A DNA stretch of 64,000 nucleotides from Aplysia californica (Eukaryota), in NCBI RefSeq assembly GCF_000002075.1, contig NW_004797927.1:325889-389888 (forward strand), written 5' to 3'. The notes under the pieces are model-generated. The model was not told the DNA's origin, made no database searches, and saw nothing but the letters and a program-made list of their open reading frames with translations. Below, one piece after another: positions 38,797 to 57,912 of the stretch (positions are counted from its first letter, which is position 1; each line of letters starts with the position of its first letter). The position numbers were made by a program, and so were the translations under genes.

Positions 38797-38975
38797 ATGC
38801 AGTTTATGCTGCTGTTTAGCCGTCAAGGCAAGCTGAGGTTACAGAAATGGTTCGCAGCTCATCCCGACCGCACAAAGAAGAAGATCACGCGTGAGCTGAT
38901 CACCCTTGTTCTCGCAAGAAAACCAAAGATGTGCAGTTTTCTCGAGTGGAAGGATCTCAAAATTGTATATAAAAG
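38797..38975 (+). CDS. AP1S2: AP-1 complex subunit sigma, exon 2 ([18 protein letters not shown]...KIVYKR)
   Basis: Clear AP-1 sigma N-terminus; cag| and |gtaaca; 179 nt. The symbol denotes the closest vertebrate paralogue of what is probably a single invertebrate AP1S gene. Confidence 0.96.
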
Positions 38976-39797: not shown

Positions 39798-39906
39798 GTA
39801 TGCTAGTCTATATTTCTGCTGTGCAATAGAGCCTGATGATAACGAGTTGCTGACCTTGGAAGTGATTCATCGCTACGTGGAGCTACTGGACAAATATTTC
39901 GGAAGT
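39798..39906 (+). CDS. AP1S2: AP-1 sigma exon 3 ([36 protein letters not shown])
   Basis: tcag| and |gtgagt; 109 nt; conserved sigma motif. Confidence 0.96.
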
Positions 39907-40338: not shown

Positions 40339-40533
40339 GTGGGTGGTTGGCGGGTGCTGTGGTGTGGTTTGCTCCTTCTTTCCTTTCAAACATCTCTATC
40401 GTCCTGATCTCTTCTCCTTCTTTTTTTGTGTTTGTTACTCTCTTGTAACACCTCTAATCTTCGGCACTTGTATGACCTTATTGTGTTGCAAGCGCCGTAA
40501 AACTTTTACTGAACCTAAACTTACTCAAACTAA
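40339..40533 (+). mobile_element. Family A retroposon ending ~20 nt before the AP1S exon 4 acceptor
   Basis: Consensus match. Confidence 0.88.
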
Positions 40534-40553: not shown

Positions 40554-40691
40554 GTCTGTGAGCTGGACATAATCTTCAACTTTGAGAAGGCGTACTTCAT
40601 GCTGGATGAGTTCCTGCTGGGCGGGGAGGTACAGGAGACAAGCAAAAAGAACGTGCTCAAGGCCATCGCCGCCCAGGACCTGCTGCAGGAG
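40554..40691 (+). CDS. AP1S2: AP-1 sigma exon 4 ([46 protein letters not shown])
   Basis: cag| and |gtgaga; 138 nt; ends in phase 0. Confidence 0.96.
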
Positions 40692-42836
40692 GTGAGATCT
40701 GCTTTGGTTGTGTCTCGTGCCTGCCTCTCCCACTCTCTCATGTGTGTGTCCTCGCGCCTCTCCCACTCACTCGTGTGTGTGTCCTCGCGCCTCTCCCACT
40801 CACTCATGTGTGTGTTGTCAGCTCAGTGACCTCTCTACTCTATTACTTGACTGGAAAGTTTGCCTCTTCTAATTCTGTGTTATCATATCGCTTATATTTA
40901 ACAGGTAATAACTCATTTCCTTGTCTTTATCTCTGTCGGCACTCTGCCTGATCTTGTTATACCATCAGATGGAAGTCTTCTTCTATTTGGAAACTTTCAA
41001 GGTAGGGAAAAACAAAAGCAGATGTAAATGAATGTAGTGGAACAAACTTTCAAATGTCGTCCTGTGAATCTATGGGATAATTACTTCTGTACGCTCTTGT
41101 TTTAAATGAAAAAAGTTTTGTTCAGACCCAAGTTTCATTTGTTTTTTAGCGAAGGTCATGAGATGTTGGCTATGTCTTTGATGAGTGTGTAGGTCAAGTG
41201 GATCTGTCTTGTCTGACTGTCAACTGAAAGGAAATTGTCTTTTATTGAAAACTTCCCAAGTCGTTTCTCCCTTTGGATAGTTGGAAAGTCACTGTGGTAT
41301 CAGTTTTCTTGAACAACAGCATCTCCATCTCCTTGGTTTTGTTTTCCTCACAACACTTTGTTCTTCATCCTTCGCTCAGTAGTGTTTTTGTACTTTATGC
41401 ACTAATGCTTGTGTAGAAATAACCCAGGAGGAATGAGCAACTAAGCTTGGGTGTGGGTGGAGAGTGGCACAAATCACATCTCAGGCACGTTTCTCCACGG
41501 AGAGAAAGGGCAGTGGGACGCAAGGAGAAATGCATGCATGGAATCTCTCGGTTTTGTCACTTCCTACGCCCTTGTGTGCAACGACGCTCCCTGTAGATAG
41601 GTCAGCAGCACCTGTCCCAACACAGTCCATGACGGGATATCATCGTCCTTGTACATGTAGCGACCGACGTCAGGCAGGGCCCTCTATTGTTGCGTCTGGA
41701 ACAGTTTCTCCACCGAATCCCTCACAATTAACAAAATTCCCTCGCACCTCCCCCCCACACCTCCTCCCCAGGCAGCCTCTAGCCCTGCACCCCCCATACC
41801 TCCTCCCCTCACAGCCTCTAGCCCTGTGTATTCTTGGCCTGGCATCTTGGTCTTACAATCGACAACAAATTTACATGGCAAATGACGCAAACAATATCGT
41901 TAATAAGGTAGATCAGAGGCCTGTCTTGTTGTGCGCGTGCGTGAGTGCACCTAAACTTTGTAACGTCTACTGCTATTGTTAACGACCAAGACAAATTTCT
42001 CCCTGCGAGATGAATAAAGATTGTCATTGTCATTGTCATGGTGCAAACTTGGACATTGTTTGAAATGATGAAGTTTGGTGTTTGGATAGTTGATCCTGTT
42101 GAGGTCAGGCGAATTGTCTCCAACCTTTTTGTTAAGTGTTCTGAGGAGAAAAAGATAATGTGTAGATTCTAAAAATTATTTTTGGGTTGTTTGAGAATGA
42201 ATGATATGGTTCACTGGGTTTTATTTTTAAAAGGGGGTTTCTTTTTTTCTGTGTGGTGTAATTTTTTATGTGATTTAAAAATGCTAGACTTACAGGTTCC
42301 TTTTTTCTTTNNNNNNNNNNNNNNNNNNNNNNNNNNNNNNNNNNNNNNNNNNNNNNNNNNNNNNNNNNNNNNNNNNNNNNNNNNNNNNNNNNNNNNNNNN
42401 NNNNNNNNNNNNNNNNNNNNNNNNNNNNNNNNNNNNGGGGGAGGAGGAGGAGGAGAAGGAGGATGAGAAAGAACAGGAAGAAGAAAAGGCGGGAGAAAAG
42501 AAGGAGAAGAAAGGACGAAGGAGAAGAAAGGACGAAGGAGGAAGAGGGAAGAGGAGAGGAAACAGAAGAGCTGCAAGGCTGTTCGGTTCGTATATCCAGG
42601 TAGTCTTTCGTTAGATGTGTTGTTCTTTTTTCGCACCTGTTTTTATTTTTTTATTTTTTTGTAGCTTACTTTCTTACATTGGACTTAATTATTTTTGTTC
42701 AAAACTTCAAAAAATTGAGAAATATTAATAATAGGAGACTGCTCCTTTGACAAAATAGAGCACTTTTTCTAACTGTCTGTGTTTGTAGCAGGTTCCCTTT
42801 GGGTCAGTCTATGTGTGGGCGTTGTGGTTGTGTGTA

Positions 42837-44489: not shown

Positions 44490-44534
44490 GATGAAGCAAT
44501 AGAAAGTGCCCTGAGAGATAATGGCCTATACTAG
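44490..44534 (+). CDS. AP1S2: AP-1 sigma alternative terminal exon A (DEAIESALRDNGLY*)
   Basis: Pyrimidine tract + aag| acceptor, phase 0. 14 codons, the same length as exon B, with the shared D-x-G-L motif. Confidence 0.65.
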   Translation, partial: DEAIESALRDNGLY

Positions 44535-46030
44535 CCCCGGCCTCTCCTTACCTTCTTACAAACCTCTTCAGGTCAGATATTATATTTTGTATATATATAT
44601 ATACATATCTCTTGGTTATCTTTTTCGTTTCTTTTTTCTATATATTCTCTGACATTTTTCCTGTTTTCTGTCCTTCCCTCCAGTGCTGATGTACTCAAAT
44701 GGTTATGGTCTTTTCTTTGTGCTCTCTTTCTCTCTGTTGTCTTCACGGCGAAACTGCTGCTTATGCATTTTGATTAAGGGGGTGGTCGGGTGCGACTTCA
44801 GGCTGAAAATTGGGTCAAAATATCGTTTTTGAGGTTTTTACAGAAATAAATTACTGAAAGTGTCTAGGTATCAAATCTGGTATATTATTTTTCAGAGATA
44901 AGCATGCTGTATGGGAAAGTTTGTTTCATATGTCTACTTATAGTATCACAGTAGGTCATGTAATTTTTTACTTTAATGGCCATTTTCTCTGAACTGTGTT
45001 TTTCATGGACAGCATGCCACGAAAATCCTAAAATCTCGCTTACTTATTGCCGTAGCGACTTGAAATTTGGCACAGTGATAGCTTATCCATATTTCTAGGT
45101 AATGAGCTAGTTATTTTTGTCTTTCTTTGTATATGGCAGGGGCCATAAGCATTTTTATCAGGTTGGGGAGGTGTATTTTCAACACTTTTTTACACCATGT
45201 AATTCAGTCACGCTTCATCCATAATAACAACCAAATACAAAAAGAATAGTCACCCTATTACCTCGATATACGTCCTGCCTTTCCCTTCCTATCTTACAAA
45301 GTGCAATATCTTGATTAGTGTTTGAGATTTTAGGAGTTTAAGATTTAAGTTTACTTTCACGATGGCCGCCATCAACATGACAATGAGTGATATATGTCAT
45401 GAATAACACCCTGAACCATTCCGCACCTTGGCATTAAGTCTTAATATGCTAAATTCTTTTATTTAGGTCAGTGAATGAAGATTGTTTTTAGCTCACCAGA
45501 CCTCCCCCTTAACACAACTATGCACACTGTCACACTGCCATCCAGAGAGTCTTTTCTCCTGGAGAGTAAGTTGGTCGTATTTCCCTGGTGACAANNNNNN
45601 NNNNNNNNNNNNNNNNNNNNNNNNNNNNNNNNNNNNNNNNNNNNNNNNNNNNNNNNNNNNNNNNNNNNNNNNNNNNNNNNNNNNNNNNNNNNNNNNNNNN
45701 NNNNNNNNNNNNNNNNNNNNNNNNNNNNNNNNNNNNNNNNNNNNNNNNNNNNNNNNNNNNNNNNNNNNGGTGATGTCCTGTGTGTCATGTGACTGGCCGA
45801 GCGCGCTCGCTCGTGTGTGTTCAAGGCTTCCCCCACCGCACGCTTGAGGGTTGGGGTCTGCCTGTTTCTCCTCAACATTTGTGCCGTCTTTGTGTTGCAA
45901 GTGCCGTAAAACACTTTCTAAAACTAAAGTTTGTTCCGTCTTTGTGTGTTGCATTTCTGCATTGGGCATGAGCATTATATATTATTGTCTTATTCTAGAC
46001 TCTTGACCGGACAATGTGTGTGTGTCTTAT

Positions 46031-46238
46031 TTGGTTGCTTTTAAGCACACGAGGGGGCTATCCCGAAAAATGCTGTTTTGAGAAAATCGAAGGTAAAGTT
46101 TTTGCCCCTTGTTCAGTTTCTTTAAAAGACAAGAGGAGAGTTTTCTCTATAACATAACAAATATACTCACCAATGAAACCAAACTTCTCCTATAGGTAGG
46201 GCAATGCCCACTTTTGGTGTAGGTCAAGATTTCTAGAA
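46031..46238 (+). mobile_element. MITE family C, truncated where a family A copy begins
   Basis: Matches 12105-12312, then switches directly to the family A head. Confidence 0.8.
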
Positions 46239-46415
46239 GTGGGTGGTTGGCGGGTGCTCTGGTGTGGTTTGCTTCTTCTTTCCTATCAAACATCTATCGT
46301 CCTTATCTCCCCTTCTTCTTTTTTATGTTTGTTACTCTCTTGTGACACCTCTAATCTTCTGGCGCTCAAATGACCTTATTCAGTTGCGAGCGCCGTAAAA
46401 CCTCTACTAAAACTA
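46239..46415 (+). mobile_element. Family A retroposon with the GGCGCTC/GAGCGCC tail variant
   Basis: Family A body joined to the alternative hairpin. Confidence 0.85.
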
Positions 46416-46518
46416 AGAAACTGAAAGGTCACTGCTGTGTCACGGGTCACGCTGACCTCACGGCTCGCTCCGTTGTTTTGGCTGGAGGAGAGGGTGGTAG
46501 TTAAGAGCTCACAAGACT

Positions 46519-46678
46519 TACAATAATTCTCTGACACTTACGTCGATGTCATTATATACGTACAATAATTCTCTGACACTTACGTCGATGTCATTATATA
46601 CGTACAATAAATCTCTGACACTTACGGGGATGTCATTATATACGTACAATAAATCTCTGACACATACGTGGATGTCTT
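46519..46678. repeat. 42-bp minisatellite x~3.8
   Basis: Unit tacaataattctctgacacttacgtcgatgtcattatatacg. Confidence 0.9.
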
Positions 46679-46816
46679 TGCAGAATGCACCCTCGCTGTG
46701 TCGTCACGAGCCATGAACTCTTTGTCTTTGTATTGTTTGGTTTTTTGCTACGTTTTGTTTTTTGGTTGTTGTTTTTTACTCTCGGTTTGTTCAGAAATTC
46801 TCCTACAAATACACAG

Positions 46817-46999
46817 GGTGAGTGGTTGGCGGGTGCTCTGGTGTGGTTTGCTCCTTCTTTCCTATAAAAAAATCTATCGTCTCAATCTTTCCTTCTTCTT
46901 TTTTGTGTTTGTTACTCTCTTGTAACACCTCTAATCTTCGGCTTTTATATGACCTTATTGTGTTGCAAGTGCCGTAAAACTCTTACTAAAACTAAACTA
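46817..46999 (+). mobile_element. Family A retroposon with TSD
   Basis: AAATACACAGGG at 46807-46818 and 47000-47011. Confidence 0.9.
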
Positions 47000-47669
47000 A
47001 AATACACAGGGACTGTTTTTTCCCCCCGCCCCAGTTTTGCACATTACAATTGTTGTGACCTTCCGTTAGTGTCTAAGTTGTATTTCTTCTTTGGTGAAAG
47101 AGGGCGGGTCTGAAGATGTTTCATTTGGTGCCAGGATGTTTGCTCAGGGAGCGGGGACGGAGCTCACATGGGGGTGCTTGTACAGCAAACAAAAATTGTA
47201 CTCAGGCCACTAGCCTTCTTTCTTGCCGGGTCACACTGCTCTGTTTGTTTGCCAGTGATCTTATATAATAATAACAAATATACGCTATAGAATGATAAAT
47301 ATCATGTGTAGCGGACACAATCCCTGGGCGGCAAGCTCTCCGCGCTGTACACTCTATCATTACCTCAGCAGATCGGAAAACACTTGGAAATATTCTAAGC
47401 TTCCTGAGAAGCATACAGTGCAAGCAGCTGATTAAGCGCTAAAACTGACAAGATCTTTCGCTGTCTATAGCAGGGTTAAGGGAGTGTTCATTACTCTTTG
47501 GCACAGACTCTGATTTTCTTCTTCTTTTTGCAGTTGCACTTAATAAGCACATTGGTGTAATGTCTTAAATAGCTGCTCTGTGTTGGAAAGGGGGCAAAAC
47601 TGATGCAAAAACAAACTGGTTTATATTCCCTTTCTGATAATTTTGCGAAATCTTAAGCTGTTGTCCGTT

Positions 47670-47846
47670 GGTGGCTGGCGGGTGCTCTGGTGTGGTTTGC
47701 TCCTTCTTTCCTATCAAACATCTATCGTCCTTATCTCCCCTCATTCTTTTTTGTGTTTGTTACTCTCTTGTAACACCTCTAATCTTCAGCACTTATATAT
47801 GACCTTATTGTGTTGCAAGTGCCGTAAAACTCTTACTAAAACTTAA
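47670..47846 (+). mobile_element. Family A retroposon
   Basis: Consensus match. Confidence 0.88.
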
Positions 47847-48264
47847 AAAGTTTTTGATGGAGTTTCTCTGTCTGTCTGCCGCGGGGGCAGGATCCCACTC
47901 GGCCCGGGGGAGGGGGGGCACGATCCCAATCGGCCCGGGGGTGGCCCTTACCAGCGAGATTGTAACAGTCTGCCTATTACATGACCTAAATTCAGTCAGT
48001 GTGGGCATAAAATAGTAACACTGAGTCACTGAGTGTATGCTAGCGCCTGTTGTCTTGTCCTGTGATTTGTGGGGATGATCTGTGAACGTGGAGAGAAGGG
48101 TGGTATAATGTGGCTGTCATGTGTCATGGCAGGAGCCGTGTTCAACATTTGAGCAGGGAGGATATACTGGGCGTGGAAGAAAAGATCAGATCAGATCAGA
48201 TCAGATACATCTTTATTGTCCAGATCCTGGCATATTGGTTTGGTGTTTCACCACGTACACACAA

Positions 48265-48437
48265 GTGGGTGGTTGGTGGGTGCTCTGGTGTGGTTTGCTC
48301 CTTCTTTCCTATAAAACATCTGCCGTCTTTATCTCCCCTCTTTTATTGTGTTTGTTACTCTCTTGTAACACATCTATTCTTCGGCACTTACATGAACTTA
48401 TTGTGTTGCAAGTGCCGTAAAACTCTTACTAAAACTA
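48265..48437 (+). mobile_element. Family A retroposon
   Basis: Consensus match. Confidence 0.88.
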
Positions 48438-48461
48438 TATCCCTGTCGTGGCTTGTCTCTA

Positions 48462-48906
48462 CAGTGGAGTCAGCCTAAAGTGAGCACGCTTTATTTGAAC
48501 AATCGGTAAAAGTGAAGGATATTTTGTGGTCTCGATTGAAACGCTATTTGTTTAAGTAAAAAAATTTGGATAAAATGAACTGGTTTCATGGGGAAATCGG
48601 ATAAAGTGAACGCCCAAAATGAGTGAAAGCGAAGAACGGACTGTGTGAAAATAAAATTCTTTGCCTCGCGCTTCGGCAGACAATCCCAGCTCGGCGTTGG
48701 CGACGGTAATCTCAGTCAGAAAGAAAGAGCTCTAGTCTAGGCTCGTCGGCTGTGTTGTCCCACCCCACCTCCACCCTAGACCCACCACTGCGCGTAGCTA
48801 CTGTTTCTTCTAGGCGTCCACGCTACCACAATGGTTCAACTGAACCTCGGATAAAGTGAACACTTTCTACTGGTCCCATAGAGAGCACTTTGAGCGGACT
48901 CCACTG
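48462..48906. mobile_element. Tc1/mariner (pogo/Tigger-like) MITE
   Basis: TA|CAGTGGAGTC...GACTCCACTG|TA; internal GGATAAAGTGAAC repeats. Confidence 0.85.
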
Positions 48907-49530
48907 TAGTTTTCCAAAGGGTTTGGTGGAAAGTGGTAGAAAAAAGTCTACCCCAAAAATAACTAAGTAGGTTTACAATGATCTAATTGAAAAATTTGCT
49001 AAGAAATGTTATTCCTGTTTGAAAGAATTTCTATGTCTGATCGAAATCCCTCCACCATTGGCCTTATTCCTCTCTTGAACTATTTTCTGTCATTTGTGTG
49101 TGTTTCCCGCGTGTTGTTCGCTCCTGACCTAGTACAAAACCTATCTCTGTCTACCGTATCCTTTTTCTTTTTACCTGAACTGAAAGGACTTTTTGGACGG
49201 TACTGAGAAATTTGTTTTTATTGAACGAGGCTCATGAACACTTAGAACCATAGACTTTGAAATCGGAAGTGCTGGGGTTTTCTAAACTTGGTTGAAATAA
49301 CAAAACACATGGTCAATATTCTACCGAAATAGACATTCACCAGTCCAGTGGTGTGACCTTTGCTGCTCTCTTGTGATTTTCTTTTGTCTCAAATTCAGAA
49401 GTCACATTATATATATTTTTAAAGAAATTTTGTACCCCCTGGACCCTAACTAAGTTGTTTTTTTTGCCCCTGTTCCTTTTTCACTTTCCCAGAGTGTTTT
49501 GTAAGGAGTTCTGGTGTCTCAATTTTCTTG

Positions 49531-49763
49531 TCAGTTTGTGTAAAACAGTGAGGGTTGAAGGAGTTCTGAAGCCTCAATAGTTCAGTTTGTGTAAAACAGT
49601 GAGGGTTGAAGGAGTTCTGAAGCCTCAATAGTTCAGTGTGTGTAAAACAGTGAGGATTGAAGGAGTTCTGAAGCCTCAATAGTTCAGTGTGTGTAAAACA
49701 GTGAGGGTTGAAGGAGTTCTGAAGCCTCAATAGTTCAGTGTGTGTAAAACAGTGAGGGTTGAA
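49531..49763. repeat. 51-bp minisatellite x~4.5
   Basis: Unit tcagtgtgtgtaaaacagtgagggttgaaggagttctgaagcctcaatagt. Confidence 0.92.
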
Positions 49764-49942
49764 GCAGAGCTGATGCTGCAGATTTGTGAAAGGATGTGTT
49801 AGGCTTGTTTTGTCTGAGTGTGTAGATGTGATTGATGAATACTTGTGGAAGAAAAAAGTTGAGTGTAGGATGTTGGTAAATGAGACTGTGTTTACAGCTT
49901 GCCGATATTGATCATGTATGGTCCTAGGTTTCTGAGCCGTTG

Positions 49943-50240
49943 CTCTGTCCTGTAAAGCTCTCTCTGGTAATCCTCTGTCCTGTAATGCTCTCTCTGGTAA
50001 ATCTCTGTCCTGTAAAGCTCTCTCTGGTAATCCTCTGTCCTGTAATGCTCTCACTGGTAAATCTCTGTCCTGTAAAGCTCTCTCTGGTAAATCTCTGTCC
50101 TGCAAAGCTCTCTCTGGTAAATCTCTGTCCTGTAAAGCTCTCTCTGGTAAATCTCTGTCCTGCAAAGCTCTCTCTGGTAATCCTCAGTCCTGTAATGCTC
50201 TCTCTGGTAATCCTCTGTCCTGTAAAGCTCTGTCCTGTAA
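49943..50240. repeat. 30-bp minisatellite x~10
   Basis: Unit ctctgtcctgtaaagctctctctggtaaat. Confidence 0.95.
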
Positions 50241-50722
50241 AACATATCACGAGAATTTTATTTCCAGTAAAGTCTTCCATCTTTCTCCTAGTTCCTTTCA
50301 CTGAGTTTCTGTCTGGGCTTGGAATCTCTGCCAGACATTTGTGTGTTGTGTTTGTCGTGCAAGTTTGTGCGAGTCGCTGAGCGAGGTGTAGTGGCTGATA
50401 GACCAACCAGGAATGTCTGTCTTACGCTGAGTGTCAGTTTGGGTGGCGTGCGCTCTCACTGGGCAGTAAGAGTTTCTGCTGGAAGAAGTTGATGGAACTG
50501 ACATTCCTTTCCTTGTTTGTGTAGCTCATGTGCACCGGTAGCCTTCTGCACTTGTGGTGGCAAGTGTCTCCAACCAAGAGTTGTACACATCTTTGGTAGA
50601 AATCTTCTCTTTTGCTCTCTTTGATTTTTGGAATGACTTGTGGAAGTTTGGAACCTTGTTTCTCATTATCTGTTCACACAAGTGGGAAATGATGGGAGTG
50701 GTGGGTCTCTTCTATCGTGTCA

Positions 50723-50897
50723 GTGGGTTGTTGGCAGGTGCTCTGATGTGGTTTGCTCCTGTCCTATCAAACATCTATCGTCCTGATCTCTCCTCCTTCT
50801 GTTTTATGTTTGTTACTCTCTTGTAACACCTCTAATCTTCGGCTCTTACATGACCTTATTGTGTTGCAAGTGCCGTAAAACTCTTACGAAGACTAAA
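50723..50897 (+). mobile_element. Family A retroposon ending ~50 nt before AP1S terminal exon B
   Basis: Consensus match. Confidence 0.85.
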
Positions 50898-50948
50898 AAA
50901 GAACATTTGATAATTTTGTTTTCTTTTCTCGTCTTTTCTATCCTTCAG

Positions 50949-50993
50949 GAGGAAACTCCGCAGGGTTTCTTTGAAGATCACGGCCTGGGCTAA
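50949..50993 (+). CDS. AP1S2: AP-1 sigma alternative terminal exon B (EETPQGFFEDHGLG*)
   Basis: Long pyrimidine tract + cag|, phase 0, TAA. Resembles the ETPQxFFEDHGLG tail I recall for invertebrate AP-1 sigma. Gives a 157-aa protein. Confidence 0.9.
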   Translation, partial: EETPQGFFEDHGLG

Positions 50994-51640
50994 GACGGCC
51001 AGCGGGCCGGCACAGTTAGGAGCTGGGCTGTACACCTTCCTCAGCATGTCCCCCCCCCACCCCTCACCCCCACCTACCTATGTCTGCTGGAAAAGCAAAA
51101 CGTACATTCTCACCCCCATCATGTGAATCTGCCGTTTGAGAGGAGAACTCTCCACCTCGGGTTTATCACCCCCTCGAGTGTGTCGGGAAGTTTGTCGTGA
51201 ATGTCCACGTGGCAGTGTTTAGTGTTTTCATTTTTAGAGAGTTCCTAGTTTTTTTGCTTTGGAGCGCTACCTTCCATTTGGTACCTAGTTGAAAGTTTGG
51301 ACAACCTTGACGGTGGTTATTGTACAACATAATAATAATAATAATATTGTTCAGAGATAGCAATGGTGTGGATGAATGTTTGTTAGCAAGGATATATTTT
51401 TTACAAACTTTTGTTTGTTCATGACAACCTGCGTGACCCGCATTGACAGACCATCATTTTTTGTACTTTTTCCCCCACAAAGTTTTTTGATAGGATATTT
51501 GAAGACTGTTTTTTTGTTGGGAGGACTAATGGCAGTAAGCAATGACATTCGTTTTTTTATGATTTGTATATATAATATACTCTACCGTGATTTTTTTTAC
51601 TCAGAACTGTGTTGTGACTTGTTTATTTTGTTTCCATCAA

Positions 51641-51646
51641 AATAAA
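51641..51646 (+). terminator. Candidate poly(A) signal after exon B (another at 52611-52616)
   Basis: AATAAA followed by a T-rich tract. Confidence 0.5.
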
Positions 51647-52725
51647 ACGTTCTTTTCTTTTATTTAAAAAGTATATATATTTTTCCAGCGTTAAGACCTG
51701 GGAGTATATTTCTCCAAGTATCACACTTTGGCATTCCCCTACTGGACAAAGCATGAGGATGACATTCCATTGAAGATTTTATGAGATTTAATTAAATGTT
51801 TGTGAAATTGTTCTGAAAAGACAGTGTGTAGAAAAGTACAATTCTTTCCCTACTCGACATGAATTGTGCACTCCGGTGTGCCATGACTTCTTTGTTTCTC
51901 TGTTTATATTTATATATAGTTGAATGTTGCCAATCCAGAGCCCTTTACTCAGTGCTGTTCTCCTTCATCTCATTGTTTTGCTTTCTCCCCCTGGACCGCC
52001 GTGGGTGGTGGGCGGGTGCTCTCTTGACATACATCCTCCCCTTGGCGCTCATATGACCTTATGCAGTTGTGAGCGCCGGAAAAACGTGTCATGACGTGTG
52101 TTGATGTAATCTGAAGGGGGGTGTTTCATGATCTGTGCTGTATCTTACTGTAGGGTAGGAAAGCTATGACACTCCTCTCCCCCCCCACCCCCCCCCCCCC
52201 CCCAGCATAAGGCGCAGGAATGGTCGGGGTGTTCGCTGTTTGTGTTGGCTATTGTCTGTTTTCTCTCTCAGTCCTGTCTTTCTGTTCCGGTACATTGTTT
52301 TGTTTTTTTCTCTTCGTTCTGTCCTTCTCTACGTTGGTTTTTTTTTCTCTTAGTTCTGTCTTTCTGTACATTATTTTGTTTTATTTTTTTCTCAGTTCTG
52401 TCCTTCTGTGCATTAATTAAACATTCCTTGTTGTACTAAGTTCTACAATTGGTGAGCGTGTGCGTGAGTGAGTGAGTGCGTGAGTGAGCCGTGTCAGTTT
52501 TGTCCGTGAATTCCCCCATCAGTTTTCTGTAACTTTGGGTTTTCCATGACTGGCTCACAGTGGACTGTGACAGATCTGTGGGTTCATGTGCGCCAAACAT
52601 GCAGAACAAGAATAAACTTGCTTTTGTGTACAAACAGGGGTTGCTTTGGGGTTTTTGGTTTCACTTCTTTACTTTCCACACTGTGACTTTGTAGTCCGGA
52701 GTGAAATTTTCTGTGTACTTTGTCA

Positions 52726-52762
<37 letters not shown>

Positions 52763-52798
52763 TATGCCTTTCACCCCTGGCAGGGTATAGGCCACATA

Positions 52799-53045
52799 TC
52801 GTCATATTTAAGGACAAGCGGGCTAACCCAGATTTCGTGGGTTTCCAGAAATCTTGACCTACACCAAAAGTGAGCATTGCCCTACCTATAGGAGAAGTTT
52901 AATTTCATCGGTGTGTATATTTGTTTGGTTATAGAGAAAACTCTCCTTGTCTTTTAAAGAAACTGAACAAGGGGCAAAATTTTACCTTCGGTTTTCTCAA
53001 AACAGCGTTTTTCGGGATAGCCCCCTTGTGCTTAAAAGTGACCAT
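52799..53045 (-). mobile_element. MITE family C, full length, inverted
   Basis: Reverse complement of 12105-12358. Confidence 0.85.
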
Positions 53046-53244
53046 AAAATATAAGCTCCATCCATTTATCTCTGTCCTAGGCCATCCTTTCAAGCTCGTT
53101 CCAAGTGAACTTCATCTTTCTCATGTCCCTTTCCACACATCTCCCCCATGTTACTTTGCGACATGCTAGCAGATAAATAGTTAGGGCCGTCTTACAAAGT
53201 GCGATGAACATGTGGGGGGTGGTTTGTGTTCGGACCTGTATGCT

Positions 53245-53372
53245 TCCCGGGAAGCTGAGAATGTTTCTGAGTGTTCTATGGTCTGCTGGGGTAATATATA
53301 TAGTGTAAAGCGCATAGAGCCTGCTGTTGAGTGGGGACATGCGCTATACAAATTATGTTTATTTATATTATT
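53245..53372 (+). mobile_element. L2/CR1-type retroposon 3' end
   Basis: TGTAAAGCGCATAGAG...GCGCTATACAAAT followed by an ATT-rich tail; second copy at 62904-63030. Confidence 0.6.
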
Positions 53373-54441
53373 GATGGGCACCATCAAATAGGGCATTTAC
53401 AAAGTGGAAGTTTGTTGTTGTTGATGCAGTCTCCGTTTGTTGGATTGTGTTCCCTGCGCCCTTTGTTGGTGGCTTGCTTGTGCATGGTACTCCTAGTTTC
53501 TTCTCTCTTTCTCTTTTTCCTCCCTCTTTCTCTCCCTCCCTCTCCTCTTTCTCTCACTCTCTGCCTCTGGTTTCAATCTTTTCGTAGTCTACTCCTGTTT
53601 CCTCTGTTGTATGTTGTTCCAAATGGCTTGTGATGACTCGTGAATGTACTCAGAATAATTGGCCGTGCTACATGAAGGGTTTGATTGATGCTTGCTGTAG
53701 AGACATGACGCTGTCTTTGGCTTTGGCTTAGATTACGCTGGGAGTGAAGCAACAGCTGTACAGACACAGCGCTGTATTAGTCTTTGGCTTAGCTTACGCC
53801 GGGAGCGGGCAGACAGAGCTTAGAACGCTGGGCTTGGTGGAGGTGTGGCTGGTCTGTACACAAGCTTTACTCTCACTCACACACACTGAGCGACAGGTGA
53901 GTTGTGCCAGTGAATCAGTCACCGCTAAATGACAAATCTGTTGCCTGGACCATCTGTTTTGTCTCACACTTGATGTAGCTGCTGTCTTTCTGTTCTGGGC
54001 CTATTTCTTTGTCCAAGCAGTTTTGTCCGATAAAGAAATCATCTAAAAAGTTGTCTCAGTTTGGAGTTAGATCCTTGATGAACGGAACAAATTGACCGTG
54101 CACGTGACAAGAATCGGAACTAGGCATCAGGAGTGTGAGATTTGCACTAAGCAGACGTGTGGGGGTTTTCCTACTTGCCCAACCCCACAGACGGGCCAGT
54201 CACTTGTGTGGCTCTGTGGGAAACCCCAGTGTTGATGCAGGGGAAATAACTTCTGGCCAGGAAGTGTGTGATCAGTTACAAAGATAAGATAAGATAAGAT
54301 ACATCTTATACACAAAGTGCCGGACTCCTCTCTGACAGTTTCTCCCACCACTGGCACAGGGTAGCTTTAGCCACAGAACAACGCTTTCAATGTTCGGTAT
54401 TGGGGGAAGAGTTTGTATCAAACCAAGCTGACCGACAGCTT

Positions 54442-54635
54442 CTTTGTTTTTGTTTTAGTAAGAGTTTTACGGCACTTGCAACACAATAAGGTCATATAAG
54501 TGCTGAAGATTAGAGGTGTCACAAGAGAGCGGCAAACACAAAAAAGAAGGAGGAGAGATAACGACGATAGATGTTTGGTCAACTTTGGTAGGAAAGAAGG
54601 AGCAAACCACACCAGAGCACCCACCAACCACCCAC
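54442..54635 (-). mobile_element. Family A retroposon, antisense, with TSD
   Basis: ACAGCTT at 54435-54441 and 54636-54642. Confidence 0.88.
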
Positions 54636-54872
54636 ACAGCTTGTTAAGAATCAAGGATTGAGGCTCTCATTGTTTAGAATTCAGAACACTTTCCAAAGCA
54701 GAATCCTCTGATTGTTTCAGTTTTGCATTCAAGTTCAAAAAGAGACGAGAGAGATGGTTTTAGTGTCAGGTTTGAAAGTTTGGGTCTTTGAAAGAAAAGG
54801 TGGGGCTCTTCCTGCTTGTGTTTACCTTTCTTATGGGAGAGGATAGTGTGGAGGGAATGTTTTTATTATGTT

Positions 54873-54929
<57 letters not shown>

Positions 54930-55594
54930 GTACACACTGTATTAGTAAGTATTACACACTGTACGACACGCATGTTCTGTAAGGTCCATCACGGCTTTCA
55001 TCATCCTGCCTGTGCTGCAATGCCCTGTCTAATACTCTGCTTGAAAACAGCTTGTCAAATCTTTGCACGGAATACTCGGAATGCTATATTGCACGCAATA
55101 TAAAGCAACTAGTGAATGTGATATCAATTTTAAAAATATTATATTATAAATATGACATTTTGTGGGAAGCTTTTGTGAAGGGTAAGTGTCAAATATGCCA
55201 ATCGCTCACGTCTTGAAAAACTTGAAATAGTGTTCTCTAAATACTTTTATAGTCTTATACCAAAAAAAAGCAAAAAACATTTGACTTTTTACAATTTCTA
55301 TCTGGCTTTGTGTAGCTATAATTGTGTTGCAGCCACCAAAAGTGATGATGTTGTTCAATTTTTTATTTCTTAAAGGAAAAAGCCTACTATGTATGTCTTA
55401 CATTTAGGGAAGCTAGAATTAAGTGTATTGTGCACCTCATCAAAGCCACACCGGCTGACACATTGTTACACTGACAAAAGTAAAGTTTTGTGACAAGCCG
55501 TCATTGTGAACTCACATGACCGTGTTTACTGTACTGTGAGCTGGAGAGTCTATGTGCCTCCGTGTGACTTCTGTACACTGTTCTGGCTCAGCGT

Positions 55595-56000
55595 TTGTGT
55601 ATACGTGTGTATGTACATGTTATATATATAGCCCACCACGAGGCTTTTGTCTATACGTGTGTATGTACATGTTATATATATAGCCCACCACGAGGCTTTT
55701 GTCTATACGTGTGTATGTACATGTTATATATATAGCCCACCTTGAGGCTTTTGTCTATACGTGTGTATGTACATGTTATATATATAGCCCACCACGAGGC
55801 TTTTGTCTATACGTGTGTATGTACATGTTATATATATAGCCCACCACGAGGCTTTTGTCTATACGTGTGTATGTACATGTTATATATATAGCCCACCACG
55901 AGGCTTTTGTGTATACGTGTGTATGTACATATATGTGTGTCCTACCATGAGGATTTTGTCTATACGTGTGTATGTACATGTTATATATATGGCCCACCAC
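55595..56000. repeat. 52-bp minisatellite x~7.5
   Basis: Unit ttgtctatacgtgtgtatgtacatgttatatatatagcccaccacgaggctt. Confidence 0.95.
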
Positions 56001-56195
56001 GCGACACTATGTGTCATACATGTGTTTGTGTGTGGGGGAGGGGGGTCTATGTGTGTGTATGTGTTTGTGTGTGGGAGGGGGGGTCTATGTGTGTGTATGT
56101 GTTTGTGTGTGTGGGAGGGTGGGATGTCTGTATGCACATGTATTCATGTTATGTGCATGTGGCTGGTACTCAAACCGGACTGGTTTATTAGCAAT

Positions 56196-56585
56196 ATATG
56201 TGGGACATCGTGGTAAAATCAAGCGCTCATCAAAATAATGAAATTGAAGATATCGTCATTTTCCCTTCTGTTTGTCAAATTTTTGCTAATTTTTTCTTTT
56301 TGTCTCTCAACACCTTTTATGTCTCAATATAAAAAAACCATTTCCATGTAAATTTGACAGAAAAGGTTGATTAAAGGCACAAAATATGTAATTTTTCAGT
56401 TTTAAAGGACTATCAAGCTATTGAAATTACCCAAATTTGGCAGCCATTTTCTCGCGACTTTTATCACTTAAAACAGGCGACCCCACCTCCTTCCATCAAA
56501 AATATCTTGACTTCTAGATGATACCATTAACTCGACACGCCCAAAAACTGATGAGCGCCTGATTCCACCGCGTCGTGACACATAT
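56196..56585. mobile_element. MITE family D
   Basis: ATATGTG termini; inverted AATCAAGCGCTCATCA / TGATGAGCGCCTGATT; related to 26191-26604. Confidence 0.65.
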
Positions 56586-57108
56586 TCAGTAGATGCTACA
56601 AAGGATTATTTACCCACAACAAAGACGTGTGCTGTGTGAACAAGCAAGTTTTCAGTGTGTCGCTGTGGTCAAGTATTGGTAGAATTTGCGTTTGTTGTAA
56701 AACATTGTTTAATATGTGTATATGACCATAGGAAAATAAATGAGCAATGCAGTCCACTTAACTGCACAATTCTTGAGATGGAAGGAAAAAACAAAACAAA
56801 GAGGAGAATTCTAAAATGACAAGGAATATTTGTACATTATGTATTATTCTTTATCTTACATCTGAGAAGAGAAACAGAAATGTATTACAGGTAAAGTTCA
56901 TTTGTTGAGAATAGTGCACTCTGCTTTATTAGTGTTGATTTTTCTGTACATTGCTGGCCAAAGTTGTTATAGACAAAGCCAAGGATAGAATTAATTGGTT
57001 CAGGATTAGACTCAATAGTTTTGAGCGTTGATCTGGCCATCAGTAATTTGTGAGACAAAGTTGGAGAGTAGATTTGTGAATAGGAGAGGAAAGCAGTGTA
57101 TTCTGCAC

Positions 57109-57645
57109 TTGTCTTGTTAATGTTTCTCATGACAATCTTGTCTTGTTAATGTTTCTCATGACAATCTTGTCTTGTTAATGTTTCTCATGACAATCTTGTC
57201 TTGTTAATGTTTCTCATGACAATCTTGTCTTGTTAATGTTTCTCATGACAATCTTGTCTTGTTAATGTTTCTCATGACAATCTTGTCTTGTTAATGTTTC
57301 TCATGACAATCTTGTCTTGTTAATGTTTCTCATGACAATCTTGTCTTGTTAATGTTTCTCATGACAATCTTGTCTTGTTAATGTTTCTCATGACAATCTT
57401 GTCTTGTTAATGTTTCTCATGACAATCTTGTCTTGTTAATGTTTCTCTTGACAATCTTGTCTTGTTAATGTTTCTCATGACAATCTTGTCTTGTTAATGT
57501 TTCTCATGACAATCTTGTCTTGTTAATGTTTCTCATGACAATCTTGTCTTGTAAATGTTTCTCATGACAATCTTGTCTTGTAAATGTTTCTCATGACAAT
57601 CTTGTCTTGTAAATGTTTCTCATGACAATCTTGTCTTGTAAATGT
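57109..57645. repeat. 29-bp minisatellite x~18
   Basis: Unit ttgtcttgttaatgtttctcatgacaatc. Confidence 0.95.
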
Positions 57646-57775
57646 GAGTGGTTGGCGGATGCTCTGGTGTGGTTTGCTCCTTCTTTCTTACTCTCTTATA
57701 ACACATCTACTCTTCGGCACTTATATGACCTTATTGTGTTTCAAGTGCCGTAAAACTCTTACTAAAACTAAAACT
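57644..57775 (+). mobile_element. Family A retroposon (internally deleted) inserted at the end of the 29-bp array
   Basis: Head and tail match; TTGTAAATGT on both flanks. Confidence 0.85.
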
Positions 57776-57855
57776 GTTGTAAATGTTTGTTTCTCCCGAC
57801 AATCTTATCGTAAAACGCTTACTAAAACGACAATCTTGTGCTTTCTTTCTCAAAG

Positions 57856-57912
57856 GAGTCGGAGGAACCTCGAGGAATCCTGGAGGACTTTGGCTTCATG
57901 GTGGGCAGCTGA
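57856..57912 (+). CDS. AP1S2: AP-1 sigma alternative terminal exon C (ESEEPRGILEDFGFMVGS*)
   Basis: ctttctttctcaaag| acceptor, phase 0, TGA. Resembles the vertebrate-type tail ExExPRSVLEExGL (recalled, not searched). Confidence 0.78.
   Translation, partial: ESEEPRGILEDFGFMVGS

What the first reader, a model, noticed from the sequence alone, without database searches (positions are those of the whole stretch)
44490..57912. AP-1 sigma gene with three homologous, mutually exclusive C-terminal exons
Seen: after exon 4 (ends ...DLLQE, phase 0), three separate phase-0 acceptors each open a short coding exon ending in a stop. A 44490-44534 is DEAIESALRDNGLY, B 50949-50993 is EETPQGFFEDHGLG, and C 57856-57912 is ESEEPRGILEDFGFMVGS. 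They align on an acidic start plus [SG]-x-[LF]-[RE]-D-x-G-[LF], and A and B are the same length, consistent with ancient exon duplication. Recalled knowledge: B resembles the fly/nematode tail, and C resembles the vertebrate AP1S1/AP1S2 tail (ExExPRSVLEExGL). Inference: one gene makes, by alternative last-exon choice, a set of sigma-1 variants, and may keep an ancestral exon array from which other lineages retained different members. Sigma-1 tails are where paralogues differ most, so this could tune AP-1 function by tissue. The ORF track does not translate any of the three in the correct frame.
Basis: partly seen in the sequence, partly recalled or inferred. Interest (0 to 1): 0.85.

Follow-up and report, generated by a model that had tools for sequence, protein, structure and literature searches.

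The report
Three alternative tail exons in AP-1 sigma
The sea-hare AP-1 sigma gene does carry three conserved alternative exons encoding different C-terminal tails, but public gene annotation already lists these isoform classes in molluscs and arthropods, so this is real and modestly interesting, not new.

Summary
After the coding exon that ends ...DLLQE (donor at 40691, phase 0), three phase-0 acceptors open short exons with their own stops: A 44490-44534, B 50949-50993 and C 57856-57912. Profiles built only from other species' tails each hit the window once, at these places (E 5e-7, 1.5e-9, 1e-10; next best above 1).

A RefSeq protein, Aplysia californica AP-1 sigma-2 isoform X2, matches the window's core exons plus B exactly, so B is already annotated. 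All three classes are RefSeq isoform tails in other molluscs. A and B occur throughout arthropods. C is the vertebrate-like class.

The genomic order A-B-C is conserved in five molluscan loci from four other mollusc species and in a nemertean. Daphnia has A-B only. Substitutions concentrate at third codon positions, which shows purifying selection on all three.

Three things remain open:
- It is unresolved whether A is a true last exon or a stop-carrying cassette exon.
- There is no evidence that A or B predate the protostome-deuterostome split. Deuterostome and cnidarian tails all score as C-like.

Seven literature searches found no paper on this array, but the feature is in public annotation. 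The scan noted this same stretch again as s1-766677.

The parts
36434..36436 (+). Candidate end of a first exon that supplies the initiator ATG (ccaatATG|GTGAGG). Inferred only.
   Evidence: P0397 starts MM, but exon a supplies only the second M. This is the only ATG|GTRAR site near upstream with a good donor. There is no RNA evidence.
38797..38975 (+). Coding exon a ([12 protein letters not shown]...KIVYK plus 2 nt), donor AAG|GTAACA
   Evidence: Identical to residues 2-60 of P0397. 73-81% nucleotide identity to five other loci.
39798..39906 (+). Coding exon b (completes R, then YASLYFCC...KYFGS), donor AGT|GTGAGT
40554..40691 (+). Coding exon c (VCELDIIF...AAQDLLQE). Its phase-0 donor GAG|GTGAGA is shared by all tail exons.
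   Evidence: It is the only match in the whole genome.
42311..42436 (.). Assembly gap inside the intron between exon c and A
   Evidence: Not filled. It could hide a small exon such as the second A-like exon seen in Physella.
44490..44534 (+). Tail exon A, DEAIESALRDNGLY plus stop. The acceptor is AAG, an A at -3 shared by 7 species (8 loci).
   Evidence: (E 4.9e-7). Same class as oyster, abalone, nemertean, insect, tick and Daphnia isoform tails.
45595..45768 (.). Assembly gap inside the intron between A and B
   Evidence: Touches no exon. Not filled.
50949..50993 (+). Tail exon B, EETPQGFFEDHGLG plus stop. This is the tail of the annotated isoform X2.
   Evidence: exact match to the end of P0397; E 1.5e-9; no second-position change in 7 species.
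57856..57912 (+). Tail exon C, ESEEPRGILEDFGFMVGS plus stop, the vertebrate-like class
   Evidence: P0158 differs by one residue; Mya, Patella and Physella isoforms; E 1.1e-10.

Best explanation
The window holds the single AP-1 sigma-1 (AP1S) gene of a sea hare, by exact protein match Aplysia californica. Its core fold is encoded by exons a-c and ends at ...DLLQE, which is where the sigma subunits of AP-2 and AP-4 end. Downstream lie three homologous short exons, A, B and C. Each is entered in phase 0 from the same donor and each carries its own stop. Whichever is spliced in first therefore sets a 14-18 residue sigma-1-specific C-terminal tail, and at the protein level the three are mutually exclusive. 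Shown here: the exons, their phases and stops; their one-to-one orthology with three conserved tail classes; purifying selection on each; the conserved order A-B-C in molluscs and a nemertean, and A-B in Daphnia; and that B is an annotated Aplysia isoform. Inferred: A and C are also used in Aplysia; the weak AAG acceptor of A makes it a regulated minor choice; B versus C is a choice between a proximal and a distal terminal exon; and the tails alter partner binding of AP-1 rather than core assembly. C is the ancestral metazoan tail type. A and B are seen only in protostomes. Vertebrates carry C-type tails in the separate paralogues checked, sigma-1A and sigma-1B.
For: Sequence and frames. Identity with XP_005108130.1 (P0397). 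Independent-profile hits. Tail classes in annotated isoforms: Haliotis X1=C and X3=A; Gigantopelta X2=C, X4=B and X5=A; oysters X2=B and X3=A; Tubulanus X1=C and X3=A; and many insects, ticks and crustaceans with A and B. Exon order in genomic loci: Physella, Patella, Haliotis, two Mya loci, Tubulanus and Daphnia. Mean pairwise difference at codon positions 1/2/3: A .23/.17/.56, B .10/.00/.63, C .28/.10/.66. Profile-profile homology: B-C P 1e-5, A-B 2e-4, A-C 8e-4. An oyster transcript contig has exon c joined to A. In PDB matches, sigma-2 (142 aa) and sigma-4 (144 aa) lack the tail, and an AP-1 sigma chain of 142 residues without the tail is deposited (6cri). [quoted passage not shown]
Against: Use of A and C in Aplysia therefore rests on conservation and on annotation in relatives. 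Poly(A) signals after each exon are no more frequent than chance would give. Whether A is terminal is open. In the oyster contig, A's stop is followed after 15 nt by a B-like exon start. Two AlphaFold models were of low confidence (mean pLDDT 59 and 53), so nothing firm can be said about tail structure. No functional data exist for any invertebrate tail.
Confidence: 0.85

Rival explanations
1. Same three exons, different mechanism. A, and perhaps B, is not a last exon but a short stop-carrying cassette exon that is spliced onward. On this reading the A mRNA is c-A-B with B's 3' end, and the choice is inclusion or skipping of an exon rather than coupled splicing and polyadenylation.
For: In the oyster transcript contig L010, A's stop is followed after 15 nt by a sequence identical to the first 22 nt of a B exon. 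GT sites lie 12-44 nt after A's stop in Aplysia (CAG|GTCAGA), Physella (CAG|GTCAGG), Haliotis and Tubulanus.
Against: Scored with a donor matrix built from the 21 constitutive donors of these loci, the sites after A are no better than the best site in random windows of the same loci (fraction equal or better 0.17-0.83). After the B-like stretch, L010 runs into an unrelated ORF and may be a chimeric assembly. Daphnia shows no plausible donor after A.
Confidence: 0.3
2. Only B, perhaps with C, is used in Aplysia, and A is an unused relic exon.
For: Only the B isoform of Aplysia was recovered from the protein collection. A has a non-consensus AAG acceptor.
Against: A is intact and has the class-typical length and stop. 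Across 7 species it shows a third-position excess (.56 against .23 and .17). Between Aplysia and Physella, nucleotide conservation covers just the coding part of A. The AAG acceptor is itself conserved in all 7 species. The class is annotated or transcribed in oysters, abalone, Gigantopelta and many arthropods.
Confidence: 0.05
3. Assembly artefact: the three exons are collapsed or misplaced copies from different loci or haplotypes, joined across gaps.
For: Two gaps lie between the exons.
Against: The three exons differ in sequence and belong to three distinct conserved classes. The same order is found in six gap-free loci of other species. The genome has a single exon-c match.
Confidence: 0.01

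Closest known systems
RefSeq-annotated isoforms of 'AP-1 complex subunit sigma-2' in molluscs and arthropods, for example Haliotis X1/X3, Gigantopelta X2-X5, Ostrea X2/X3, Bemisia, Ixodes and Aplysia californica X2 (XP_005108130.1)
   Same: The same gene, the same three tail classes and the same exon order. The Aplysia X2 protein equals the window's exons a, b, c and B.
   Different: Nothing essential. I could not confirm whether the Aplysia annotation also lists the A and C tails.
Vertebrate sigma-1A, sigma-1B and sigma-1C (AP1S1, AP1S2, AP1S3)
   Same: Three sigma-1 variants with one conserved core. [quoted passage not shown] The sigma-1A and sigma-1B tails examined here are C-type; the sigma-1C tail was not examined.
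   Different: Vertebrates use separate genes, whereas here one gene uses alternative exons. The A and B classes were not seen in any deuterostome in these searches.
Alternatively spliced tandem-duplicated homologous exons of ancient origin (PMC4465641, PMC9741552, PMC4494069); insect myosin heavy chain, where exon choice replaces a gene family (PMC2257972)
   Same: Tandem homologous exons, ancient, under purifying selection, giving isoforms that differ in one homologous segment. Exon choice in invertebrates stands where vertebrates have paralogues.
   Different: Classical cases are internal exons of equal length that keep the frame. Here each exon ends the reading frame with its own stop, so exclusivity at the protein level needs no special splicing mechanism.
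Non-homologous alternative 3' ends of vertebrate AP1S2 (tails seen in P0136 and P0145; an AP1S2 cryptic last exon is reported in preprint 10.64898/2026.01.30.702498)
   Same: An alternative C-terminus after the same ...DLLQE exon boundary.
   Different: Those tails are unrelated in sequence to the canonical tail. A, B and C are homologous to each other.

Membership tests
AP-1 sigma-1 subunit (AP1S; Pfam PF01217 Clat_adaptor_s) | Small-chain adaptor fold (PF01217) over the core exons | tested here: met
   All relatives found with exon c and with full-length homologues carry precomputed PF01217. P0397, which equals the window's exons, sits in such a cluster.
AP-1 sigma-1 subunit (AP1S; Pfam PF01217 Clat_adaptor_s) | Closer to sigma-1 than to the sigma subunits of AP-2, AP-3 and AP-4 | tested here: met
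   sigma-1A (1w63) E 5e-80, AP1S3 1.5e-70, sigma-2 8e-40, sigma-4 5e-32, sigma-3 (AP-3) 4e-28.
AP-1 sigma-1 subunit (AP1S; Pfam PF01217 Clat_adaptor_s) | Assembles with gamma, beta-1 and mu-1 and binds dileucine signals | not testable with these tools
Array of homologous alternative C-terminal exons | One upstream donor and several acceptors in the same phase, each exon with an in-frame stop | tested here: met
Array of homologous alternative C-terminal exons | The exons are homologous to one another | tested here: met
   hhalign of class profiles, end to end over 14 columns: B-C P 1e-5 (probability 82%), A-B 2e-4 (45%), A-C 8e-4 (24%). A is the weakest link.
Array of homologous alternative C-terminal exons | Each exon is conserved as coding sequence in other genomes, in the same order | tested here: met
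Array of homologous alternative C-terminal exons | Junction reads from the common donor to each exon in this species | not testable with these tools
Only B is backed, by the annotated protein P0397.
Alternative last exons in the strict sense | Each exon has its own cleavage and polyadenylation site and no downstream donor in use | tested here: inconclusive
   AATAAA occurs 275-650 nt after each stop, but that is about the chance rate. The donor test after A gave no support for a donor. The oyster contig suggests A is joined to B.

The most novel reading that the evidence does not exclude
The ordered A-B-C exon array is the protostome counterpart of the vertebrate sigma-1A/B/C gene family. On this reading the three tails give AP-1 distinct partner sets or tissue roles, for example a neuronal form, and have been kept for over half a billion years. 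The ancestral C tail would have been joined by A and B before the protostome radiation. That would make a single-gene animal such as Aplysia, with its identified neurons, a clean system for asking what sigma-1 tails do.
Probability: 0.3. Interest if true: 0.5.

Novelty: already known. Interest (0 to 1): 0.3.

Why it matters
The tails are where AP-1 sigma-1 variants differ, and in mammals the sigma-1 paralogues are not interchangeable: sigma-1B loss causes intellectual disability (PMC4944158). Invertebrates with one gene keep three tail classes under strong purifying selection, which argues that the tail has a function, although structural work can leave it off (a 142-residue chain is deposited in 6cri). 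The exons are already in public gene models, so the value here is comparative. This is a dated, ordered exon array that parallels a vertebrate gene family, and it offers a simple target for isoform-specific experiments.

Tried and rejected
All searches used single exons by reference or proteins returned by tools.
- Donor after exon A: a matrix from 21 constitutive donors gave scores no better than random windows, so the cassette reading has no support from this test.
- Poly(A) signals are not informative.
- AlphaFold models of the B isoform (P0397) and of a Haliotis A isoform were poor (mean pLDDT 58.8 and 52.6). The hints are low-confidence only: the B tail as coil, the A tail continuing the last helix.
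- Orthology of the second deuterostome tail class (Ptychodera X2, Amphiura X5) with A is not supported, because those tails score higher with the C profile.
- Gene look-ups failed for Mizuhopecten, Ptychodera, Amphiura and Nematostella, so exon order in deuterostomes and cnidarians is untested. The amphioxus locus showed one tail only.
- The ORF at the end of the oyster contig looked to me like an integrin-alpha start, but Pfam gave nothing.
- A 118-nt cross-species blastn hit at 17008-17124 is only an (AT)n run, and Rfam found nothing there.
- Seven literature searches found no paper on invertebrate sigma-1 tail exons. Boehm and Bonifacino 2001 is not held.
Full report
**What is in the sequence**

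The + strand carries an AP-1 sigma-1 gene.
- Coding exon a is 38797-38975 ([12 protein letters not shown]...).
- Exon b is 39798-39906 (YASLYFCC...KYFGS).
- Exon c is 40554-40691 (VCELDIIF...AAQDLLQE).

Their donors are AAG|GTAACA, AGT|GTGAGT and GAG|GTGAGA. Exon c ends in phase 0.

Downstream, three AG acceptors open short frames that continue phase 0 and end in a stop:
- A, 44490-44534: DEAIESALRDNGLY*
- B, 50949-50993: EETPQGFFEDHGLG*
- C, 57856-57912: ESEEPRGILEDFGFMVGS*

**The assembly gaps**

The flagged gap (45595-45768) lies in the A-to-B intron. A second gap (42311-42436) lies in the c-to-A intron. No exon touches a gap. Each tail exon is read from the donor at 40691 by splicing, so reading-frame continuity across the gaps does not arise. 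What the gaps leave open is scaffold order and hidden small exons. The order is supported by six gap-free loci of other species (see below). A hidden exon cannot be excluded.

**More than chance**

I collected annotated and transcript-derived sigma-1 proteins with two searches seeded by proteins the tools returned. I sorted their tails into three classes: 50 distinct A tails, 7 distinct B tails and 14 distinct C tails. I left out Aplysia's own protein, built one HMM per class, and scanned all 3435 stop-to-stop pieces of the six-frame translation of the window.

- A: E 4.9e-7
- B: E 1.5e-9
- C: E 1.1e-10

Every other piece had E above 1. Profile-profile comparison supports mutual homology, aligned end to end over 14 columns: B-C P 1e-5, A-B 2e-4, A-C 8e-4.

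**Whose gene it is, and what is already annotated**

The window's genome has 927,310,431 bases in 4332 contigs and only one match to exon c. A member of the 90% cluster of a Physella isoform is XP_005108130.1, 'AP-1 complex subunit sigma-2 isoform X2 [Aplysia californica]' (P0397, 157 aa). Exons a, b, c and B translate to exactly its residues 2-157. Its first Met must come from an upstream exon. A candidate ends at 36436 (ATG|GTGAGG), but this is inferred only.

So the B tail is an annotated isoform of this very gene, and the label X2 implies at least one more. I could not look up the A and C forms, because joining exons into a model was to be left out. That step is simply omitted.

**The three classes elsewhere**

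| Class | Pattern | Where found |
|---|---|---|
| A | DEA[VIF]E.AL[RK][ED].GL. | Insects, crustaceans, ticks, spiders, horseshoe crabs, springtails, tardigrades, oysters (X3/X4), abalone (X3), Gigantopelta (X5), unionid mussels, an annelid, the nemertean Tubulanus (X3) |
| B | EETPQGFFED[AH]GLG | Arthropods, molluscs (octopus, scallops, oysters, Littorina, Nucella), annelids |
| C | E.[DE]EP[KR]..LE[ED].G[FL]... | Mya, Mytilus, scallops, abalone, Patella, Physella, Gigantopelta, Tubulanus, the flatworm Macrostomum; one unnamed transcript differs from Aplysia's C by a single residue |

Vertebrate sigma-1A and sigma-1B tails, lamprey, echinoderm, hemichordate, amphioxus, cnidarian and sponge tails all score best with the C profile. 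That includes the second alternative tails of Ptychodera and Amphiura. C is therefore the general metazoan type, and A and B were seen only in protostomes.

**Exon order and selection**

I fetched genomic loci for C-type isoforms, whose gene range should span the array, and mapped the tails.

| Locus | A | B | C |
|---|---|---|---|
| Physella | 15739 | 17227 | 19253 |
| Patella | 15918 | 17884 | 22635 |
| Haliotis | 15844 | 22182 | 27099 |
| Mya, first locus | 21220 | 26644 | 35141 |
| Tubulanus | 13782 | 16554 | 20520 |
| Daphnia | 4617 | 4888 | none before the next gene |

Positions are in each locus's own coordinates. The second Mya locus has the same order. The order is always A, B, C, as in the window.

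Across these species the mean pairwise difference at codon positions 1, 2 and 3 is:
- A: .23 / .17 / .56
- B: .10 / .00 / .63
- C: .28 / .10 / .66

This is the signature of purifying selection on the encoded peptides. Between Aplysia and Physella, the only blocks alignable at the nucleotide level in this region are exons a, b, c and the coding parts of A and B.

The array is thus at least as old as the mollusc-nemertean ancestor, and A-B is at least as old as the protostome ancestor.

**How it most likely works**

The sigma subunits of AP-2 (142 aa) and AP-4 (144 aa) end where exon c ends, and an AP-1 sigma chain of 142 residues is deposited (6cri). The alternative exons therefore encode a sigma-1-specific extension beyond the shared fold. 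It is probably not needed for core assembly (inference).

Because each exon has its own stop, the first one included fixes the tail.

Exon A has an AAG acceptor in all seven species examined, whereas B has CAG or TAG in every species. From general knowledge, A at position -3 is rare in acceptors. A conserved weak site fits a regulated, non-default exon (inference).

[quoted passage not shown] By analogy, the tails would tune AP-1 partner choice. That is inference; nothing here tests it.

**What stays open**

- RNA evidence for this species.
- Last exon or cassette exon. An oyster transcript contig joins exon c to A. Fifteen bases after A's stop it continues with the first 22 bases of a B-type exon, then runs into an unrelated ORF. 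This may show A spliced to B, or it may be a chimeric assembly. GT sites follow A's stop within 12-44 nt in several species, but they score no better than random windows.
- Tail structure. Both AlphaFold models were poor.

**Novelty**

The exons and isoforms are in public gene models for many species, and B is annotated for this gene. Seven searches of the held literature found no description of the invertebrate array. The general phenomenon of ancient, alternatively spliced, tandem-duplicated homologous exons is well described, as is exon choice in invertebrates standing in for vertebrate gene families (PMC4465641, PMC9741552, PMC4494069, PMC2257972).

I therefore class the feature as already known. 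The comparative pattern (order, age, selection) is a modest addition.

Noticed in passing
window, 12 copies, e.g. 40482-40503, 50860-50881, 57735-57756 (core motif); also 4137, 13883, 40103, 45891, 46959, 47809, 48402, 54464, 63677: A SINE-like repeat of about 190 bp is present in 12 copies, 9 of them in the sense of the gene. Shuffles give 0 expected matches of the 22-nt core. Copies end about 30-100 nt upstream of the acceptors of exon c, B and C. The repeat's 3' end (CTTACTAAAAC...) looks like a branch-point consensus.
   Followed up: partly
L004:14866-14910 (Physella acuta): A second, more divergent A-like exon (DDALQDVLIEYGLF*, acceptor AAG, A-profile E 0.017) lies between exon c and exon A. 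No counterpart was found in the window outside the gap 42311-42436.
   Followed up: partly
L010:937-1324 (oyster transcript contig, SRR6750467): After the A-type stop come 15 nt, then 22 nt identical to a B-exon start, then an unrelated ORF with a signal-peptide-like start (MKLSWTILFL...). Pfam gave no hit for that ORF. This is either A-to-B splicing plus a chimeric join, or an assembly artefact.
   Followed up: partly
L001 and L002 (Mya arenaria, same chromosome, about 0.43 Mb apart): The whole AP1S locus and its upstream neighbours (a BTB_2 gene and a 346-aa gene) are duplicated. Both copies keep intact A, B and C exons.
   Followed up: no
proteins (e.g. P0036, P0047, P0052, P0369, P0385; P0371-P0373; P0375, P0384): Arthropods have further recurring tail classes. 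Insects have a read-through of the exon-c donor giving VS......EL. Mosquitoes have VLDEEDYFWIY. Ticks have DEMLEAGVQD. Arthropods therefore have more than the A and B choices.
   Followed up: no
L003, L004, L006, L009: A short-chain dehydrogenase gene (adh_short) lies head to head just upstream of AP1S in Patella, Physella, Haliotis and amphioxus, which is conserved microsynteny. In the window, the minus-strand ORFs upstream (27790-28137, 33420-33662) look different. From memory they are NDK/DM10-like; I did not test this.
   Followed up: no
L009:10539 and 10630 (Branchiostoma): The first coding exon ([12 protein letters not shown]...) is present twice in tandem, and the upstream copy has an early stop.
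   Followed up: no
acceptors of exon A in the window and in L001-L004, L006-L008: The A exon has an AAG acceptor in all seven species, while B always has CAG or TAG. This looks like a conserved suboptimal splice site.
   Followed up: partly
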